The notes beneath the pieces were generated by a model. That model worked only from the letters and a program-made list of their open reading frames with translations. It ran no database searches and was not told the origin of the DNA. A stretch of DNA of 64,000 nt, from positions 372,001-436,000 of IMG/VR virus record IMGVR_UViG_3300028920_000022; one strand, written 5' to 3'. The translations under genes were made by a program, and so were the position numbers. Of this stretch, positions 3,168 to 25,875 are shown in pieces. How positions within the stretch are numbered: the stretch's first letter is position 1; every line of letters starts with the position of its first letter.

Positions 3168-3196
3168 TTGACATTTGAAACATCTCGTTATATGAT
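3168..3196 (+). promoter_or_regulatory. Sigma70-type promoter, probably leaderless, for the deaminase gene
   Basis: TTGACA-17 nt-TATGAT, with ATG 5 nt after the -10 box. Confidence 0.7.
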
Positions 3197-10214: not shown

Positions 10215-10628
10215 ACGTAGTAGCTCCTACGAAACACGCTTGTTAATATTCCCCAAACCAAAACGAAAACGCCCCATTAATCCTCCAGGTCCTGCGAGTG
10301 CATACGATTTAGCTACTAGACCAAAGTGGGATAATTGAAAGGGAAAACCCATATGACATTAAGACAATGGTTGGCTGGCAAATGGTTTCTATTATTGGGG
10401 CGTTGTCCTGCTTGCAAATCAAACCCTTTTGTAAAGAGATGTGGAATATGCGAAAAGAGTTTTCCATTATATGGATACCCTGTACAACAATATATATGGA
10501 GACAATATTCATGCTGGTTACAAAGCCATCAATACTATCTACTGTCTGTAAGAAAACAAACTGCGCATAAACGGTTTCAAGCTAAAGAATACGAAGAAAC
10601 ATATTCGTACAATTGAAAGAAAAAAGAT

Positions 10629-19067: not shown

Positions 19068-19655
19068 ATGATTCATTATTATATAATTGACGTAGAAACG
19101 AATGGTCTAAAAGCTGGATATCATGAGGTAACACAGATTTCGATCATACGTTGTTCAGACAGAAACCAACTAAATAGATACATCAAACCTGAACATCCCA
19201 ATCGTACAACGCCAAAAGCATTAGAAGTGACGGGTAGAACTTACGCCGATCTTTCTAAAGGGGATGATAAAGAAACGGTTGTGGAGTTTTGTGATGCTTT
19301 TTTTCAAGAGGATTCAGCTACTCCAGAAGAACGATGTATTGTGGGGCATAATATCCACCGTTTTGATAAGAAGTTTTTGCATGCTTTGTGGAAATCGGTT
19401 GGTAAGAAATTTCCTGCCAATTTGTGGTTAGACACATTACCTTCCACCAAAAAGTTTGCTACCAACCAGGGAATATATTCGGAGAATTTTAAGTTAGATT
19501 CTTGTTTGAAAGTGTTTGGTGTCAAGCCCAGACCTGGCGGACACAATGCTGTGGTGGATACTCAAAACACGTATATTTTGCTCAAGAGATTAGAAAAGAG
19601 CGGAATAGACCTACTTCCGTTTACCCAAAGATCTGTACATATGGTCGATGCCTGA
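19068..19655 (+). CDS. DEDDh 3'-5' exonuclease, second paralog
   Basis: DVETNG, HNIHRFD, HNAVVD. Confidence 0.85.
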   Translation: MIHYYIIDVETNGLKAGYHEVTQISIIRCSDRNQLNRYIKPEHPNRTTPKALEVTGRTYADLSKGDDKETVVEFCDAFFQEDSATPEERCIVGHNIHRFDKKFLHALWKSVGKKFPANLWLDTLPSTKKFATNQGIYSENFKLDSCLKVFGVKPRPGGHNAVVDTQNTYILLKRLEKSGIDLLPFTQRSVHMVDA

Positions 19656-19875
19656 GGAAATCATGGGAAGCATAACTAAAAAAATACGCAAGAAGGCTGA
19701 AAAATATCAAAAAGCCCTAGAAATTGTTGAGAGCAGTTTAGATAACATAGAGATGCCTGAAAGTTTTGAAACGTATGATTTGGCTGATTCTGTTAAATCA
19801 GAAATTGAAAAAGCCAAAATCGATCGTCGTCAAGCAAGAAACAGGCGAAAGGCGGTGAAGCGTGGTCGTAGATAG
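19648..19875 (+). CDS. Small basic hypothetical protein
   Basis: Overlapping coupled ORF. Confidence 0.5.
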
Positions 19876-20410
19876 AACAAAGGGAGTTACTTTGTGGTTG
19901 ACCGGGTTATCTGGCGCAGGTAAAACTACTGTTGCCCAAGCGCTAGAAACTCGCTTGATTAATTATGATATCAATTGCTATCGGCTGGATGGTGACGAAC
20001 TACGTACAGGGCTGTGTTCTGGGCTGGGTTTTAGTAAAGAAGATCGCTCAGAAAATATAAGAAGAGTTGCGGAGGTTTCTAAATTATTCGCAAATGCAGG
20101 TTTAGTTTCTATAGTAAGTTTAATCAGTCCATATATTGAAGACAGGGACAATTGTCGAAAAATTCATGAAAACGCAAATTTACCATTTGTTGAGGTTTAT
20201 GTTGATGCCCCATTAAATGTATGCGAAAGTAGAGATCCGAAAGGATTATATAAAAAAGCCAGAGCTGGAGAAATAAAAAAGTTCACCGGAGTAAGTGATC
20301 CATACGAGGGACCATTGAATCCTGAAATAATATTACGAACAGCTGAAAATTCAATTAATGACTGTGTAGAATTATGTTTGAAATATTTGCAAGAAAATCG
20401 CTTGACATAG
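19862..20410 (+). CDS. cysC: Adenylyl-sulfate kinase
   Basis: [43 protein letters not shown]. Confidence 0.95.
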
Positions 20411-20430
20411 GCGGGTAGTTCGGCTATCGT
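20402..20430 (+). promoter_or_regulatory. Sigma70-type promoter of the Ro60/TROVE gene
   Basis: TTGACA-17-TATCGT, followed by a GGAGG RBS. Confidence 0.75.
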
Positions 20431-20447
20431 GGCGCGGAGGAAAAAAA

Positions 20448-22064
20448 ATGACTACATCATCTGATTTTGTGAAAAGTTTAATTGGGGACCAGGAAAAGGC
20501 AGAGGTTTTAGAGCCTTACCTGAAAAAGAACGAAGATTGGCGGTTCAGTGTTGCTCGTGTAATGCTAACCGGAATTCTCAAGAACCAGTTTTACCGATCC
20601 GCAGAAGATGCAGCCAAAGAAGCGTTGCCATTAATGCTTATGGCTGCAAAGAAGGATCCCGAATTCCTATTAAAGGCTGCCGCTTTTGCACGTGAAGCTA
20701 ATATGAAGGGAATGGTCAAACTGGGTCTGGCAGCTTTAGCAACTCAGGCTCCAGCCCAATTTTTAAATGATAATCGGGCTACTATTGTTGGTTTGTTAGG
20801 AACTTTTCACCCAGGACAATTACTTCAATTTGTTGAACTAATGAAGTCAAAAGTTTTGGGCAGGGGTTTTGGTGCCCGCTCTCAGAAATGGGTACAGTCT
20901 GTAATGCAGTCTTGGCGCCCAGAAAAGGTAGAAGAATATACCCTAAAATATCCAACTGCATACAAGGTTCTTCTGCGTCTTGTTCACCCATCATATAGTG
21001 ATGTGCGAAGTGGGTTGGTTCGATATTTATTGGACCCCTCAGAAAAATACCCAGAATATGGCACACCAGCGGGCAAGATTCAAAAAGCGGTTGAGCGCAT
21101 CAAAACCTCTAACGATGATGCGTATATTGCCAAAACCATGTTGGAATATGAAATTCCTTGGGATGTTGTCAAAGGATTCCATTCTATTAATGGAGATGTT
21201 GGTTTAGCAATGTTAACCCAGATGGGGCTTTCTGCTTTACTGTTAAACACACGCAGTTTAGAGAAAAATGGTGTTTTAAACACCCCGGATGGAGTCCAAG
21301 CGTTTGCTCTAAAGTTAAATGAGGTTAAAAACGGCAGATCTATTCCCATTGATTTTGCCAAACCATATATTTATTCTGAGAACCATCAGGTCAAGGAGTT
21401 ATTAGTAAAGGCGATTGTTGACACCTTGGGCAAAGAAATGCCTCATATTGAGGGAAGAAGCATTGGTGTCAGCGTTGATATTTCTGGTTCGATGAGCAAC
21501 GAACCATTACAAACTGCTGGGCTGTTAGCAATTCCATTTTTGAAAGCACGCAATTTGTGGTTTACCACGTTTGATACGCAGTGCTATGAAGAAGGAACCC
21601 AGGTACGCGGTCGAAGTTGGTATGGCGCTTTATCTGAGGGAAAATATATTTGTCCACCACTGAAGGGTTTGGAGCCGGAACAGCAGGTAAAGAATCTGTT
21701 AAGTTTGCGGGTAAATGGTGGAACTAATGTTTCTTCGTCTTTGGACAGAGCGTTGCAAAACAATATTAATTTGGATTTGCATGTTCTAATTACCGATGAG
21801 CAGCAAAATGCCGGAACTCCGTTGATGAGTGTTTGGCGTGAATATAAGCGTCGAATTAATCCACGAGCCGAGTTGTGGATAATCAATGCTACAAACTATG
21901 TGTGGCATTCTGCGGATTTCGATGATCCGAGCGTTACCGTTTATCAGACCATGACGCCTGCAATTTTTAAGAATCTACGATTTTTTGGTCAGGATTTAGT
22001 TTCTGCTATTAAATCGTATGATTTGAATAAGGTTCGTAGGTTGGGTAAGTTTAAGCCGGATTGA
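20448..22064 (+). CDS. Ro60/Rsr-like TROVE + vWA RNA-binding protein
   Basis: QFY and DPEFLLKAAAFARE N-terminal TROVE pattern, LLRLVHP, PWD, ALLLNTR; vWA MIDAS VDISGSM, GGTN, ITDEQ. Confidence 0.85.
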   Translation: MTTSSDFVKSLIGDQEKAEVLEPYLKKNEDWRFSVARVMLTGILKNQFYRSAEDAAKEALPLMLMAAKKDPEFLLKAAAFAREANMKGMVKLGLAALATQAPAQFLNDNRATIVGLLGTFHPGQLLQFVELMKSKVLGRGFGARSQKWVQSVMQSWRPEKVEEYTLKYPTAYKVLLRLVHPSYSDVRSGLVRYLLDPSEKYPEYGTPAGKIQKAVERIKTSNDDAYIAKTMLEYEIPWDVVKGFHSINGDVGLAMLTQMGLSALLLNTRSLEKNGVLNTPDGVQAFALKLNEVKNGRSIPIDFAKPYIYSENHQVKELLVKAIVDTLGKEMPHIEGRSIGVSVDISGSMSNEPLQTAGLLAIPFLKARNLWFTTFDTQCYEEGTQVRGRSWYGALSEGKYICPPLKGLEPEQQVKNLLSLRVNGGTNVSSSLDRALQNNINLDLHVLITDEQQNAGTPLMSVWREYKRRINPRAELWIINATNYVWHSADFDDPSVTVYQTMTPAIFKNLRFFGQDLVSAIKSYDLNKVRRLGKFKPD

Positions 22065-22065
22065 T

Positions 22066-22326
22066 GTGAAATATACACTTTTTATTCGCTACAGTGGTTG
22101 TGATATGGCATACGATCGTAAACTACAGAAAGTGGTTGGTCGTAAAGCCTGTAATACATCTTTCAATGGGCAGACTAACTGTAGCTTGCTTACTTTTGTT
22201 TTCAAGCAAAAATCTGCCTTGAAAATAGCTTTATCTAAGACAGCACGTTTGCGCAAACCGGGCATTGCTGTAAACGTTTGTGAAGAAACGGCTAATGGTT
22301 GTAGTTATAATTGTGAAAGCCTATGA
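22066..22326 (+). CDS. Hypothetical protein
   Basis: ORF after the TROVE gene. Confidence 0.5.
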   Translation: MKYTLFIRYSGCDMAYDRKLQKVVGRKACNTSFNGQTNCSLLTFVFKQKSALKIALSKTARLRKPGIAVNVCEETANGCSYNCESL

Positions 22327-22574
22327 GAGACTGGTCAAAACCTATTAGCAAGGGTAAGTTCTGCGATTACTGTCCATGTACTGCTTGTCAAACCGGCGAT
22401 GAAGAATGGGTCAGGACCGCAGGTAGAAATTACGAATGTGCGGATGGAACCCACATTTGCGGGGTTTGTCTTACCGAGGAACCATGCGGAGAAAACGGAT
22501 ATTTTTGTGATAGGTTTCCGTTATGCGAACACAAACCAAAACTAGCAGAATCTGAACTGAAAAAGTTTCGATAG
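22323..22574 (+). CDS. Cys-rich small protein
   Basis: Ten Cys, including CDYCPCTAC. Confidence 0.55.
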   Translation: MRDWSKPISKGKFCDYCPCTACQTGDEEWVRTAGRNYECADGTHICGVCLTEEPCGENGYFCDRFPLCEHKPKLAESELKKFR

Positions 22575-22592
22575 AAAACGTATTTTTATTTC

Positions 22593-22620
22593 GAAAGCCG
22601 GGGCTATGCTCCGGCTTTCT
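22593..22620 (+). terminator. Intrinsic terminator-like hairpin ending the TROVE operon
   Basis: GAAAGCCGGGGC-TAT-GCTCCGGCTTTC. Confidence 0.65.
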
Positions 22621-22640
22621 GCATATTATCGAATATTATT

Positions 22641-23144
22641 ATGGAACTTAAGAAAGCTGTATTTTTCGGCACCATATTACTAGTTGCATTATTTTGTTTA
22701 GACCTAATGATTAACATTAGTGCCTTGGCAATTTTATATATTTGTTTTATATTGTTTGCGTTATGGACAGATAATGAAAAATTTATATTTGGTACGTTAG
22801 TTATTAGTACGATATTAATAATGATAGCGTGGATATTTCACGGGGGTGGCACGGGATATGATAATGTCGCCAGATTGTTAGCGGGAGTAGTGATTTGGGT
22901 AACTGGGCTATTGTCAATTCAAAGAAAGCAGGTGGAAAACCGACTAAAGATGTTAAACGAAACATTAGAGCTTAGAGTAATGGCTAGAACCGCGGCATCA
23001 GAAGAAAAGTCTCGCCGATTAGAATTGCAGATTAAAGCCCTACAAGGTATTCGACATGCTGGGACAAAGAATTCATTATCTCAATTAGATGAAATTATCC
23101 ACAATTTGCAGGAAATTAGCAAACTTGAGGCTTTTGATGAGTAA
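22641..23144 (+). CDS. Membrane sensor-like protein (4 TM + signalling helix), no kinase domain
   Basis: Four hydrophobic segments followed by LNETLELRVMARTA. Confidence 0.6.
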   Translation: MELKKAVFFGTILLVALFCLDLMINISALAILYICFILFALWTDNEKFIFGTLVISTILIMIAWIFHGGGTGYDNVARLLAGVVIWVTGLLSIQRKQVENRLKMLNETLELRVMARTAASEEKSRRLELQIKALQGIRHAGTKNSLSQLDEIIHNLQEISKLEAFDE

Positions 23145-23544
23145 TAGTAGTACACCACCATATAGTAATGGAATTACTTTGAGATTTCTTGCTGATCAAT
23201 TTGCGCGCGGTTTTCAAGAATTACGTGATGCTGTAAATAATATACAAACCCAGGTTCAAGCTGGTGCTATAGATATGGCAGGAGTAAAAGCTGAGATATC
23301 TAACATGCAAGACAAAGTTGATGAATTACAGGTTTTAGTGCGTGGTTCTAATGATAGCTCGCTTACTTCAAAACTTCATACAATTGAAAAAGAATTGAAA
23401 CTTATTAATGAATGGGTAATCAATCAGAAAGCAATAAAATCTGAAAGTAGTAAAAATAAATTAGCTATCAAGGTTGCGGTAATAACTGGTAGTTTTGCTT
23501 TGTTGGCACAAATAGTAATGCAAATTATTCATTGGTTTAATTGA
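23137..23544 (+). CDS. Coiled-coil protein with C-terminal TM (holin/XhlA-like)
   Basis: Heptad-rich body and a C-terminal hydrophobic helix. Confidence 0.55.
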   Translation: MSNSSTPPYSNGITLRFLADQFARGFQELRDAVNNIQTQVQAGAIDMAGVKAEISNMQDKVDELQVLVRGSNDSSLTSKLHTIEKELKLINEWVINQKAIKSESSKNKLAIKVAVITGSFALLAQIVMQIIHWFN

Positions 23545-23603
23545 TTGGTGTTGTCGAGTGGCGTAAAAATGATTAACCATTAATAGTGGATGGGCGTTTT
23601 TCC

Positions 23604-23632
23604 TTGACATGGGAGCTTCGTTCGGCTAGCGT
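23604..23632 (+). promoter_or_regulatory. Sigma70-type promoter of the ncRNA locus
   Basis: TTGACA-17-TAGCGT; predicted +1 near 23639, which is the first base of hairpin 1. Confidence 0.7.
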
Positions 23633-23638
23633 AGGTGG

Positions 23639-23697
23639 TGTAACGCGAGGTTGATCTTTCATCTGCATTTTGTGGGTCTTCCGATTATTTCGTTACA
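23639..23697 (+). ncRNA. Y-RNA-like small RNA 1
   Basis: TGTAACG-C(bulge)-GA...TT-CGTTACA terminal stem, GATC/GGTC inner stem, TTTCATC loop, U-tract after. Confidence 0.65.
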
Positions 23698-23706
23698 TTT
23701 TCTTTT

Positions 23707-23782
23707 TGTGCATGGTGAGACTTGAACTTACAAATCCTCGGAAGATAGCGGTTTTTTAGACCGCCGTGTTTTCGCCATGTAC
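23707..23782 (-). pseudogene. Degenerate tRNA-Leu-type element with truncated D-arm (anticodon loop CTAAAAA)
   Basis: On -: GTACATG/CATGCAC-A acceptor, GCGGT/ACCGC anticodon stem, long variable arm, GTAAG-TTCAAGT-CTCAC T-arm. Confidence 0.55.
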
Positions 23783-23791
23783 ACATTTCCA

Positions 23792-23824
23792 AACACATGA
23801 TTTCTCAACACATGATTTCTCAAC
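23792..23824 (+). repeat. 15-bp tandem duplication AACACATGATTTCTC x2.2
   Basis: Read directly from the sequence. Confidence 0.9.
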
Positions 23825-23970
23825 TAAAACACTGGGGTTATTTTTCACTAGGAACAACGTTATTTTTGATACCATTTATTTTAATGCTAAGACCACCGTG
23901 GTATCTTAATGCGATGATGATGGTTGGTTTGGTAATGGTAATCCAAAGTACTAAGGTTGGAGAGAAGTAA
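23797..23970 (+). CDS. Small two-TM membrane protein (57 aa, not in the ORF track)
   Basis: MISQHMISQLKHWGYFSLGTTLFLIPFILMLRPPWYLNAMMMVGLVMVIQSTKVGEK*; no clear RBS. Confidence 0.4.
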   Translation: MISQHMISQLKHWGYFSLGTTLFLIPFILMLRPPWYLNAMMMVGLVMVIQSTKVGEK

Positions 23971-23999
23971 TTTCTACGCATATTTAGGATTCAGATTTG

Positions 24000-24060
24000 G
24001 GACGCGAGATTAGATCTTTCATCATTCATAGATATTTCGGGTCTAGTCGTTTTTTCGTCC
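24000..24060 (+). ncRNA. Y-RNA-like small RNA 2
   Basis: GGACG-C-GA...TT-CGTCC; 9-bp inner stem GATTAGATC/GGTCTAGTC; TTTCATC loop. Confidence 0.7.
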
Positions 24061-24065
24061 ATTTT

Positions 24066-24153
24066 GCGTTGTTCGTCTAAGTTAAGACATCCTTGTTAGA
24101 GCTTCTAAGCTATTACACAGGAAGATAGAGTATCGAATCTCTGCGACGCGCTA
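24066..24153 (+). ncRNA. tRNA-like element with expanded anticodon arm
   Basis: GCGTTGT/GCGACGC acceptor plus G-CTA end, GTCT/AGAC D-stem, TCCT...AGGA long arm, AGAG-TATCGAAT-CTCT T-like arm. Confidence 0.55.
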
Positions 24154-24154
24154 G

Positions 24155-24218
24155 GTAACGCGAAGTTAGATCTTTCATCATTTTCCAAGGTAAACGGGTC
24201 TAACTGTTTTTTCGTTAC
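24155..24218 (+). ncRNA. Y-RNA-like small RNA 3
   Basis: GTAACG-C-GA...TT-CGTTAC; inner stem AGTTAGATC/GGTCTAACT; TTTCATC loop. Confidence 0.7.
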
Positions 24219-24290
24219 ACTAATTTGACCCCTTTAAGACCATAAAAGGTTTGTTTTCGAAATACATTTAGACACAACATATCTTTTTAA

Positions 24291-24321
24291 AAGGCATGCC
24301 CTTTAAGGGTGTGCTTTTTTT
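24291..24321 (+). terminator. Intrinsic terminator after the ncRNA array
   Basis: GCATGCCC-TTTAA-GGGTGTGC followed by T7. Confidence 0.7.
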
Positions 24322-24325
24322 GTAT

Positions 24326-24411
24326 TGCGGGAATGTAGCAAAGGCGGCTAGCCAGTCTCATAAGCTGGCGTCCATTGATCGCGAAGGGTTCGATTCCCTC
24401 TCCCGCAACCA
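24326..24411 (+). tRNA. tRNA with CAT anticodon (Met or Ile2), encoded CCA, long variable region
   Basis: TGCGGGA/TCCCGCA-A-CCA; CCAGT-CTCATAA-GCTGG; GGTTCGATTCC. Confidence 0.85.
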
Positions 24412-24413
24412 GC

Positions 24414-24442
24414 TTGACATCGGGCATTATTTTTAGTATCAT
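24414..24442 (+). promoter_or_regulatory. Sigma70-type promoter of PARP 2
   Basis: TTGACA-17-TATCAT. Confidence 0.75.
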
Positions 24443-24468: not shown

Positions 24469-25875
24469 ATGGGAAAATTGAAGGTGTGGAAAGTTGGCGC
24501 AGCTGGAGAACCCAGTTTTCCTGCCAATTTTGAGGTGGCTAAAAAAGCCGTTCTCCAAGTTACAGATATTAAAACAAATCGTAATAAGTATTATGCCATA
24601 GAACTACACTCTGCTGGCAATAAATATAGAGTGTTTACTCATTATGGTCGAACAGATGATCTGGACACGAATCCTAATGCTGGGGTGCGCGAGGTTCGTT
24701 ACGGCAACTTGTCTGAATGTGAAGCAACCTATCATCAGATATATAGTCAAAAAACTAGCGCAAGAAAAGGATATAAGGAACTTAGCTTAGCATCTTCGCG
24801 TATTGGTTCGTCTCAATCGGTTGGTAAATCTAGCGGACATGTTGATGACAAAACGCTTGAAAAACTAAACAACGGTAACAAGAAAGTGATAAAAAACAAA
24901 GTTTCTACACTTTCTCCCGTTGTACAAGATTTTGTTTCTTATATTTATGCTGAAGCCACTAATGCCCTAACTAGCACAATTAATGCCAGCATTACCGCTA
25001 ATGGTATCGAAACGCCTCTTGGTGTTTTGACACTGGGTCAGATTGATAAGGGGCAAAAGATTTTGGATGAGCTTTATGATTTATTCAATTCAAAAAAGAG
25101 CCAATCAATACGTGACCATATGGTAGAACTGAGTGGTGAGTTTTATACAGTAATTCCTCACAGAATAGGCAGAACTAGGGCTGCTGTAGAAGCTGCTGTT
25201 ATTGATAGTTTAGTAGATTTTAATGCTAAGCAAGACACATTACAACTTATGCGAGACATGTTAAGTGTTTCGGGTAAAGACTCCCAGGTACTTATTAACC
25301 CTGAAATTGATAAGAAATATAATGCTTTGGGTTGCGAAATTAAAACTGTAGATAATAAAAAGTATCAAGAATTGAAGGATTATGTAGAGAAATCACAAAT
25401 AAAAACCAGAAATATTAAAGTAAAGAATATATATTCATTATGCAGACCAGAAGAACAAAAGGTTTTTGCTGATAATATTTCAAATAAACGATTACTTTTT
25501 CACGGTTCTAGGGCAAAAAACTGGGTAGGTATTCTTTCCCGTGGTTTGTTGCTTCCTAAGATTGTGGTTAGCTTGGGTGTAAACCGAACTGACGCAGGTT
25601 GGCTTGGAAATGGTATTTATTTCGGAGATGCTGTTTGCACTACATTATACTACACGTCTCCTGGAAGGCAGAGAAACACCCGGATGATGGCGATAGCGAA
25701 TGTAGCATTAGGAAAGATGAAGGATTTTAATAGAATTACGTATGGATTAAAAGGACCACCCGCTGGATATCATAGTTGTCATGGTGTACGTGGAACCTCA
25801 TTTGCAGATGATGAATATGTAATTTATGACCAGAAACAGCAGAAACTTGAGTATTTAGTGGAGTATGTGTCATGA
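24469..25875 (+). CDS. Poly(ADP-ribose) polymerase-like protein 2 (WGR + regulatory + catalytic domains)
   Basis: NRNKYY...YGR WGR domain, TPLGVL, FYTVIPH, LFHGSR / LGNGIYF / DDEYVIY. Confidence 0.92.
   Translation: MGKLKVWKVGAAGEPSFPANFEVAKKAVLQVTDIKTNRNKYYAIELHSAGNKYRVFTHYGRTDDLDTNPNAGVREVRYGNLSECEATYHQIYSQKTSARKGYKELSLASSRIGSSQSVGKSSGHVDDKTLEKLNNGNKKVIKNKVSTLSPVVQDFVSYIYAEATNALTSTINASITANGIETPLGVLTLGQIDKGQKILDELYDLFNSKKSQSIRDHMVELSGEFYTVIPHRIGRTRAAVEAAVIDSLVDFNAKQDTLQLMRDMLSVSGKDSQVLINPEIDKKYNALGCEIKTVDNKKYQELKDYVEKSQIKTRNIKVKNIYSLCRPEEQKVFADNISNKRLLFHGSRAKNWVGILSRGLLLPKIVVSLGVNRTDAGWLGNGIYFGDAVCTTLYYTSPGRQRNTRMMAIANVALGKMKDFNRITYGLKGPPAGYHSCHGVRGTSFADDEYVIYDQKQQKLEYLVEYVS

What the first reader, a model, noticed from the sequence alone, without database searches (positions are those of the whole stretch)
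20402..23632. Ro60 gene and small-RNA array share a near-identical promoter, including the spacer
Seen: TTGACATAGGCGGGTAGTTCGGCTATCGT (20402) versus TTGACATGGGAGCTTCGTTCGGCTAGCGT (23604). The shared GTTCGGCTA-CGT is absent from the other TTGACA promoters (3168, 24414, 36043). The second promoter's predicted +1 falls on the first base of RNA 1. Inference: co-regulation or duplication, giving independent support for one ribonucleoprotein system.
Basis: partly seen in the sequence, partly recalled or inferred. Interest (0 to 1): 0.6.

Follow-up and report, generated by a model that had tools for sequence, protein, structure and literature searches.

The report
Look-alike promoters at phage Ro60 locus
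Two ordinary bacterial-type promoters in a 459-kb phage, one before a Ro60 gene and one before its three small Y-like RNAs, really do look alike, but about half of that likeness is this phage's general promoter consensus and none of it recurs in related phages, so it is a minor local curiosity, not a regulatory code.

Summary
Two TTGACA-N17-TAnCGT promoters sit at 20402-20430 and 23604-23632. They match at 23 of 29 bases, and GTTCGGCTAnCGT occurs only at these two sites in the whole 458,729-bp phage genome.

The meaning is weaker than proposed:
- The TTCGG core is the consensus of all 49 TTGACA-type promoters of this genome at -18 to -14, and TCGG[C/T]TA precedes the -10 of six of them.
- With position-specific backgrounds, this pair has P about 4e-4, but 6% of column shuffles give an equally similar best pair among the 435 pairs.
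- Other promoter pairs in this genome score higher in local alignment.
- The closest relative (Ro60 81% identical) has promoters at both equivalent places, but their spacers match at only 5 of 17 positions.
- More distant relatives have no dedicated Ro60 promoter at all.
- No regulon exists in the genome or in metagenomes.

Independent evidence for a Ro60/Y-RNA system is strong:
- A profile of the protein family matches solved Rsr/Ro60 structures at about 1e-29.
- The three 62-69-nt modules show compensatory changes in 9 of 14 pairs and lie next to Ro60 in five of the six relative lineages examined.
- The array promoter would start transcription at the first paired base of RNA 1, with the same gap in the relative.

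No expression data could be obtained.

The parts
19862..20410 (+). APS kinase gene. Its last codons and stop overlap the -35 of the Ro60 promoter. It is a lineage-specific insertion.
   Evidence: Pfam APS_kinase 4e-68. No homologue at the Ro60 locus of any of six relatives (tblastn).
20402..20430 (+). Ro60 promoter: TTGACA, 17-nt spacer, TATCGT. The -10 ends 17 nt before the ATG, so the leader would be only about 10 nt.
   Evidence: The +1 calibration comes from leaderless genes.
20448..22064 (+). Divergent Ro60/Rsr orthologue of 538 aa, with a TROVE-type ring region and a vWA domain carrying a DxSxS motif.
   Evidence: PDB 2nvo Rsr 1e-9 and RO60 2e-6 for the single sequence. The family profile gives 1e-29, 2e-29 and 2e-27 over nearly full length. 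phrog_850 4e-16. D344, S346 and S348 are invariant.
23604..23632 (+). Promoter of the small-RNA array: TTGACA, 17-nt spacer, TAGCGT, with a 7-nt gap to the first paired base of RNA 1.
   Evidence: The equivalent promoter in L066 at 9630 has the same 7-nt gap.
23638..23699 (+). Y-like RNA module 1
   Evidence: Model R1, 56 bits. Covariation.
23707..23784 (.). Structured spacer element. On the minus strand it scores as a degenerate tRNA; on the plus strand it forms a stable fold.
   Evidence: Rfam tRNA 20.9 bits on the minus strand, below threshold. Plus-strand fold z = -3.8.
23997..24064 (+). Y-like RNA module 2
   Evidence: R1, 68 bits.
24153..24221 (+). Y-like RNA module 3
   Evidence: R1, 73 bits.
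24289..24319 (+). Terminator-like hairpin with a T run, at the end of the array.
   Evidence: A T-tailed hairpin, read by eye and not scanned, lies at the same place in L066.
24326..24411 (+). tRNA-like gene with a CAU anticodon, a long variable arm and an encoded ACCA end.
   Evidence: ARAGORN. Rfam tRNA-Sec 26.8 bits, below threshold. A counterpart lies in L066 at 10218-10308.
24414..24442 (+). Third promoter, before the PARP-like gene. It shares only the C-TTGACAT-n-GG start with the other two.
   Evidence: PARP, PARP_reg and WGR domains.

Best explanation
Both sites are ordinary promoters for the host's main (sigma-70-type) RNA polymerase, two of about 50 such promoters in this jumbo phage. 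One reads into the Ro60 gene. The other starts a polycistronic array of three short Y-like RNAs at the first base of RNA 1. Their likeness has two layers. (a) The TTCGG core at -18 to -14 is the genome-wide preferred sequence just upstream of the -10, an extended -10-like element. (b) The remaining shared bases are non-consensus: G-19, C-13, CG inside the -10, and T, GG, G and T in the upstream half of the spacer. These are peculiar to this genome and arose recently, either by local copying when the region upstream of Ro60 was rebuilt around the inserted APS-kinase gene, or by chance. The practical result is probably similar promoter strength and early, host-polymerase-dependent expression of protein and RNAs. 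It is not control by a dedicated motif. Shown here: the sequences, their uniqueness, the consensus, the non-conservation, and the Ro60 and RNA identities. Inferred: promoter activity, the start sites and the origin of the likeness.
For: TTGACA-N17-TAnnnT sites are six-fold enriched over shuffles in the window (6 against 1.04). 13 of 49 in the genome have an ATG 5-7 nt after the -10, which supports their being real promoters. Column counts over the 49 promoters give T-18 25, T-17 28, C-16 17, G-15 17 and G-14 27. TCGG[C/T]TA precedes the -10 of six consensus promoters, including those of unrelated genes. Three other promoter pairs score higher and one ties this pair at 30 in local alignment (54957/56766 scores 43). 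L066 (Ro60 81% identical) keeps a promoter at both places, and the array promoter has the same 7-nt gap, but the two spacers match at 5 of 17 (my count on the sequences printed). More distant relatives have no Ro60 promoter within about 300 nt, or only a weak one, and their Y modules follow tRNAs. The APS kinase is absent from all relatives' loci.
Against: 14 of 20 free positions is still the top of 435 pairs, and it falls on exactly the two functionally linked promoters (P about 3.6e-4 a priori). Nine of the 14 shared free positions are not consensus bases. The 12-of-13 block spans the -10, where both carry the rare CGT that only 3 of the 30 N17 sites have. No transcript data exist. A leader of only about 10 nt makes the contribution of the Ro60 promoter uncertain, since read-through from the APS kinase gene is equally possible.
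Confidence: 0.55

Rival explanations
1. Recent copying or gene conversion as the main cause. The downstream half of the array promoter (-19 to -7) was copied into the Ro60 promoter when the APS-kinase cassette replaced the ancestral promoter and its roughly 120-nt leader.
For: Identity is concentrated in a 12-of-13 block that includes non-consensus bases. The L066 array promoter already has T-18, C-16, G-15 and G-14, whereas the L066 Ro60 promoter does not, so the direction would be array to Ro60. The region upstream of Ro60 was clearly remodelled: the APS kinase is absent from relatives, and the leader is 17 nt here against 119 nt. This genome has other promoter pairs that look like copies.
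Against: The tract would be only 13-30 nt, with no flanking homology or repeat scars. The upstream half of the spacer resembles the L066 Ro60 promoter about as much (9 of 17, my count). The statistics allow chance.
Confidence: 0.25
2. A dedicated control element. The shared G+C-rich block over the -10 would be an operator for a phage or host factor, or a melting-limited promoter class sensitive to supercoiling or the stringent response. Either would couple Ro60 and Y-RNA synthesis.
For: The likeness falls exactly on the two functionally linked promoters and ends at the promoter edges. Both combine a perfect -35 with a weak TAnCGT -10. The stretch after the Ro60 -10 is G+C-rich.
Against: There are only two sites in 459 kb, so no regulon. 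The block is not conserved in the 81% relative or in any other relative. There is no palindrome, and no candidate regulator was identified. The 13 metagenome matches besides the window's own contig are all unrelated contigs, about the number I estimate for chance.
Confidence: 0.1
3. The shared block is not promoter sequence but part of an RNA or coding feature, for example a leader element read from upstream transcripts.
For: The first site overlaps the end of the APS-kinase ORF. Both sites could be transcribed by read-through.
Against: Both have perfect hexamer geometry. The gap from the -10 to the RNA is conserved in L066. No fold or covariation was found, and the leader folds no better than shuffles. 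R1 and Rfam find nothing there.
Confidence: 0.03

Closest known systems
Bacterial and phage Ro60 (Rsr) with adjacent Y RNAs (YrlA/YrlB, Yrn1/Yrn2); Chen et al. 2014, PMC4201824
   Same: A Ro60 orthologue has small RNAs encoded beside it. Their 5' and 3' ends pair into a stem, and a 5'-strand motif (CGCGAAG or CGCGAGG here) lies one base from the published GNCGAAN0-1G. tRNAs or tRNA-like genes sit in the same array, as in D. radiodurans, where Yrn2, tRNA-Asp and Yrn1 form one precursor.
   Different: The window's three modules are only 62-69 nt and lack the tRNA-like domain that defines YrlA. No Y-RNA family of Rfam matches them. Protein and RNAs have separate promoters 3.2 kb apart, with four ORFs between them.
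Salmonella rsr-yrlBA-rtcBA operon under RtcR/sigma-54 (PMC7790460)
   Same: Ro60 and its Y RNAs are expressed coordinately.
   Different: In Salmonella one regulated promoter drives one operon (the operon's name and its sigma-54 dependence are from my own knowledge, not from that paper's abstract). Here there are two sigma-70-type promoters and no sign of an activator site.
Sigma-70 promoters with an extended -10 (TGn) or -16-region element
   Same: Perfect -35, 17-nt spacing and a preferred G at -14 with T at -17/-18 across the phage's promoter set. A weak -10 is compensated by the other elements.
   Different: The local preference is TTCGG, not TRTG. Its recognition by any polymerase is untested.
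ROT/TROVE proteins of jumbo phages (Iyer et al. 2021, PMC7824862)
   Same: A TROVE/Ro60 protein in a jumbo phage, noted there as part of RNA-repair gene sets with a tRNA-like partner.
   Different: In the passages I read, that survey says nothing on the RNA modules or the promoters.

Membership tests
Ro60 / TROVE protein family | Sequence homology to solved Ro60/Rsr over the ring (TROVE) and vWA regions | tested here: met
   Single sequence: 2nvo 1e-9, 9nen 2e-6. Profile of 19 family members: 1e-29, 2e-29 and 1.7e-27 over positions 32-481.
Ro60 / TROVE protein family | Pfam TROVE (PF05731) and vWA_Ro60 (PF25045) at the curated thresholds | tested here: not met
   For this protein TROVE is not reported even at E up to 10, and vWA_Ro60 scores 18.7 bits against a cut-off of 27.7. 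Across the family, 19 of 19 members hit vWA_Ro60 and 3 of 19 hit TROVE. The protein is divergent, not unrelated.
Ro60 / TROVE protein family | Metal-site DxSxS motif in the vWA domain | tested here: met
   D344, S346 and S348 are invariant in the 19-sequence alignment.
Y RNA (Ro60-bound small RNA) | Long stem formed by pairing of the 5' and 3' ends, supported by covariation | tested here: met
   14 pairs, 95.6% of cells paired, 9 pairs with changes on both sides, 0 of 500 shuffles as good, and the signal collapses when the partners are slid.
Y RNA (Ro60-bound small RNA) | Encoded next to a Ro60 gene across relatives | tested here: met
   R1 matches 2-5 modules downstream of Ro60 in L066, L069, L070, L072 and L074, and none in L073. 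There are exactly 3 in the window's own genome, all in this array.
Y RNA (Ro60-bound small RNA) | 5'-strand Ro60-contact motif (GNCGAAN0-1G in bacteria, per PMC4201824) | tested here: inconclusive
   The modules carry CGCGAAG or CGCGAGG near the 5' end, one or two departures from the motif. Relatives carry ACGCGCU instead.
YrlA subclass | Embedded tRNA-like domain (T and D arms) | tested here: not met
   The window modules have 20-30-nt apical regions without T or D arms. Some relatives' modules carry 110-140-nt inserts; a T-arm-like stretch was seen by eye only in L070 9091-9221. No Rfam family matches.
Y RNA (Ro60-bound small RNA) | Physical binding to Ro60 | not testable with these tools
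   Needs co-immunoprecipitation or gel shift.
Sigma-70-type promoter | -35 and -10 hexamers at 17 +/- 1 nt, enriched over chance and correctly placed before genes | tested here: met
   13 of 49 have an ATG 5-7 nt after the -10.
Sigma-70-type promoter | Mapped transcription start | not testable with these tools
No other route was tried.
   Two sites only in the genome. The L066 promoters share 5 of 17 spacer positions. Viral and metagenome scans give only unrelated hits, about the number I estimate for chance.

The most novel reading that the evidence does not exclude
The G+C-rich block over the -10 (GTTCGGC, then TAnCGT) is a lineage-specific control element, either an operator or a melting-limited promoter class. 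It would tie synthesis of a phage Ro60 to that of its Y-like RNAs so that protein and RNA are made in step.
Probability: 0.1. Interest if true: 0.45.

Novelty: new member of a known kind. Interest (0 to 1): 0.25.

Why it matters
If the likeness were a true control element, it would be a first handle on how a phage balances a Ro60 protein with its partner RNAs. On the evidence here it is not: it is mostly promoter consensus plus a local quirk. The useful results lie elsewhere:
- The array promoter fixes the probable 5' end of RNA 1.
- This phage's promoters have a definable extended consensus and often drive leaderless genes.
- A whole clade of roughly 450-kb phages carries Ro60 with short, covariation-supported Y-like RNAs. 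This is a tractable set for studying minimal Ro60-binding RNAs.

Tried and rejected
- **Phage record searches.** Searches of phage records with the DNA and with the Ro60 protein gave nothing.
- **Viral contigs by peptide patterns.** The single-protein search found nothing.
- **Viral-contig motif scan.** TTGACA-N10-GTTCGGCTA gave 65 loci, all unrelated. Many are ordinary promoters, and the total is about the number I estimate for chance.
- **Metagenome motif scan.** The longer motif gave the window's own contig plus 13 unrelated contigs.
- **Extension of the likeness.** I looked for it in the transcribed regions (CGCG-AGG in the Ro60 leader against ACGCGAGG of RNA 1). Local alignment stops at the -10. 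The L066 leader has no such element, and R1 finds nothing there.
- **Ancestral -35 inside the APS-kinase gene.** This was an apparent MAFFT placement. I rejected it because it coincides with the kinase's own nucleotide-binding-loop coding sequence.
- **Palindrome or ECF-sigma-type reading of the block.** Rejected by eye, with no tool test: there is no inverted repeat, and no AAC-type -35 at the right distance.
- **Other promoters with similar parts.** The promoter at genome position 129588 (same TAGCGT -10 and a GGTGGTGT run) and the one at 164153 (GTTCGG in the same register) lead into what look like ordinary protein-coding ORFs. This is my reading of the sequence; the proteins were not searched.
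Full report
**What the window is.** The window is bases 372001-436000 of a single 458,729-bp virus record with 39.5% G+C. CheckV rates it complete. The metagenome scan identifies it as contig Ga0272441_10000008 (L081). It is a jumbo phage.

**The observation.**
- Each is TTGACA, a 17-nt spacer and TAnCGT.
- They agree at 23 of 29 positions, or 24 of 30 with the preceding C.
- GTTCGGCTAnCGT occurs twice in the whole genome on both strands, at these two sites only.
- The bare 9-mer GTTCGGCTA occurs three times, about what I estimate from base composition.
- The other TTGACA-N17-TAnnnT sites of the window lack the block.

**Are they promoters?**
- Such sites are six-fold enriched over shuffles in the window (6 against 1.04).
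- Genome-wide there are 49 with 16-18-nt spacers. In 13 of them an ATG opening a 50-aa or longer ORF lies 5-7 nt after the -10. Chance would not produce this, so the sites appear to be real promoters, many driving leaderless messages. It also places +1 at the 6th to 8th base after the -10.
- For the array promoter, +1 then falls at 23638-23640. The basal helix of RNA 1 opens at G23640.
- For the Ro60 promoter, +1 falls near 20437, leaving a leader of only about 10 nt. Read-through from the APS-kinase gene, which ends inside the -35, may therefore matter as much as the promoter.

**How unusual is the likeness?**
- Among the 30 sites with a 17-nt spacer, this pair is the most similar of 435 pairs: 14 of 20 free positions, with the next best at 11 and a mode of 5.
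- The promoter set has its own position-specific preferences: T at -18 (25 of 49), T at -17 (28), C at -16 (17), G at -15 (17) and G at -14 (27). The TTCGG heart of the shared block is simply this consensus.
- TCGG[C/T]TA precedes the -10 of six consensus promoters. The one at genome position 164153 carries GTTCGG in the same register and leads into an unrelated ORF.
- With these backgrounds, the chance of 14 or more of 20 for one pre-chosen pair is 3.6e-4. However, 118 of 2000 column shuffles give a best pair at least as similar.
- In local alignments of 111-nt promoter regions the pair scores 30. Three other pairs in the genome score higher (43, 38, 32) and one ties. Related-looking promoters are therefore not rare in this phage.
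- The alignment ends exactly at the promoter core.

**Relatives.** The Ro60 protein has many metagenomic homologues, several on contigs of 200-455 kb. I fetched six lineages: L066-68 (81% identity), L069, L070/71, L072 (65-67%), L073 (58%) and L074 (56%).
- *L066, array promoter.* A TTGACA-N17-TATGGT promoter stands before the first RNA module, with the same 7-nt gap to the G of GTAACGCG as in the window.
- *L066, Ro60 promoter.* A TTGACA-N17-TAACAT promoter stands 119 nt before Ro60.
- *L066, comparison.* By my count on the printed sequences, the two L066 spacers agree at only 5 of 17 positions.
- *More distant relatives.* Ro60 follows upstream genes without a close consensus promoter. Their RNA modules follow tRNA genes under promoters about 180-200 nt further up.
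- *Conservation.* The shared block is therefore not conserved. Even the existence of a dedicated Ro60 promoter is limited to the window/L066 branch.
- *Local remodelling.* The APS-kinase gene and the two small ORFs after Ro60 have no counterpart at any relative's locus. The region around Ro60 was rebuilt in this lineage, which is a plausible occasion for local copying of promoter sequence, though no scars show it.
- *Wider scans.* Scans of viral and metagenome collections for the motif returned only unrelated sequences, about the number I estimate for chance.

**The system itself.**
- *Protein.* The ORF at 20448-22064 is a divergent Ro60. Pfam alone barely sees it. It matches D. radiodurans Rsr at 1e-9 and human RO60 at 2e-6 and phrog_850 at 4e-16. 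A 19-member family profile matches Rsr and vertebrate Ro60 at about 1e-29 over nearly the full length. The vWA DxSxS residues are invariant.
- *RNA modules.* The three modules (23638-23699, 23997-24064, 24153-24221) align with modules from four relative lineages (L066, L069, L070, L072, L074). Two helices of 6 and 8 pairs are 95.6% paired, and 9 of 14 pairs show compensatory changes, far above the shuffled and slid controls.
- *Distribution.* A covariance model finds exactly three copies in the genome, all in this array, and 2-5 copies downstream of Ro60 in five of the six relative lineages.
- *Ro60-contact motif.* Near the 5' end the modules carry CGCGAAG or CGCGAGG, close to the GNCGAAN0-1G motif proposed as the Ro60 contact in bacterial Y RNAs (PMC4201824).
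- *Subclass.* The window modules lack the tRNA-like domain of YrlA, and no Y-RNA family of Rfam matches them.
- *End of the array.* The array ends at a terminator-like hairpin (24289-24319). A tRNA-like gene with a CAU anticodon follows (24326-24411), then a third promoter and a PARP-like gene. L066 has the same order.

**Prior knowledge.** Ro60 with adjacent Y RNAs in bacteria and phages, and TROVE proteins in jumbo phages, are already described (PMC4201824; PMC7824862).

**Verdict.** These are two ordinary host-type promoters. About half of their likeness is genome-wide consensus, and the rest is a lineage-specific quirk that may be a small copying event or chance. There is no regulon and no conservation. 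Common early expression is plausible, but it would be shared with dozens of other promoters. A dedicated control element cannot be excluded (about 0.1). Expression data could not be obtained.

Noticed in passing
whole genome (G000); in the window e.g. 3168-3196: 13 of 49 TTGACA-type promoters have an ATG opening a 50-aa or longer ORF just 5-7 nt after the -10. This phage, and presumably its host, makes frequent use of leaderless mRNAs.
   Followed up: partly
window 24326-24411; L066 10218-10308: tRNA-like gene with a CAU anticodon, an unusually long variable arm and an encoded ACCA end. It lies just after the array's terminator-like hairpin. It is below the Rfam tRNA threshold, and a CAU tRNA-like gene lies at the same place in the closest relative. 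By eye, its variable arm contains CGCGAAG, the same 7-mer as the 5' motif of RNA 3.
   Followed up: partly
L070 9091-9221; L072 9262-9372 and 9931-10069: In relatives some Y-like modules carry 110-140-nt inserts. I read a T-arm-like stretch by eye only in L070 9091-9221, which would be a YrlA-like architecture. The window has only the short form.
   Followed up: partly
window 23707-23784: Between RNA 1 and RNA 2 lies a stable structure (z = -3.8 on the + strand) that scores as a degenerate tRNA on the minus strand (20.9 bits). The 57-aa ORF that follows (23797-23970) has no counterpart in relatives.
   Followed up: no
window 19862-20410 and 22066-22574: An APS-kinase gene and two small ORFs, one of them cysteine-rich (my reading of the sequence), flank Ro60 only in this genome. 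They are absent from all six relatives' loci.
   Followed up: partly
window 19068-19655 and 24469-25875; L066, L069-L074: An RNase T-like exonuclease upstream of Ro60 is conserved in all relatives. A CCA-adding/poly(A) polymerase family gene lies nearby in five of the six relative lineages (none is listed in L074). A PARP-like gene (WGR, PARP_reg and PARP domains) follows the array here and in L066. Together these suggest an RNA-maintenance neighbourhood.
   Followed up: no
genome positions 54957/56766, 54957/375168 (window 3168) and 100431/163743: Other promoter pairs share more than the hexamers. One pair has 16 of 16 identical bases across the -35 and the start of the spacer. Another is alike from the upstream A-rich region to the ATG. 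Promoter families by descent seem common in this phage.
   Followed up: partly
genome 451588-451662 (-), outside the window: ARAGORN calls a tRNA with a UUA anticodon, which would read the TAA stop. It is one of 16 tRNA genes in the phage.
   Followed up: no
L035 3729-3753 and 5735-5759 (-), an unrelated 178-kb viral contig: Two TTGACA promoters 2 kb apart share TCGTTCGGCTATAAC. This is a similar case of paired look-alike promoters in another phage.
   Followed up: no
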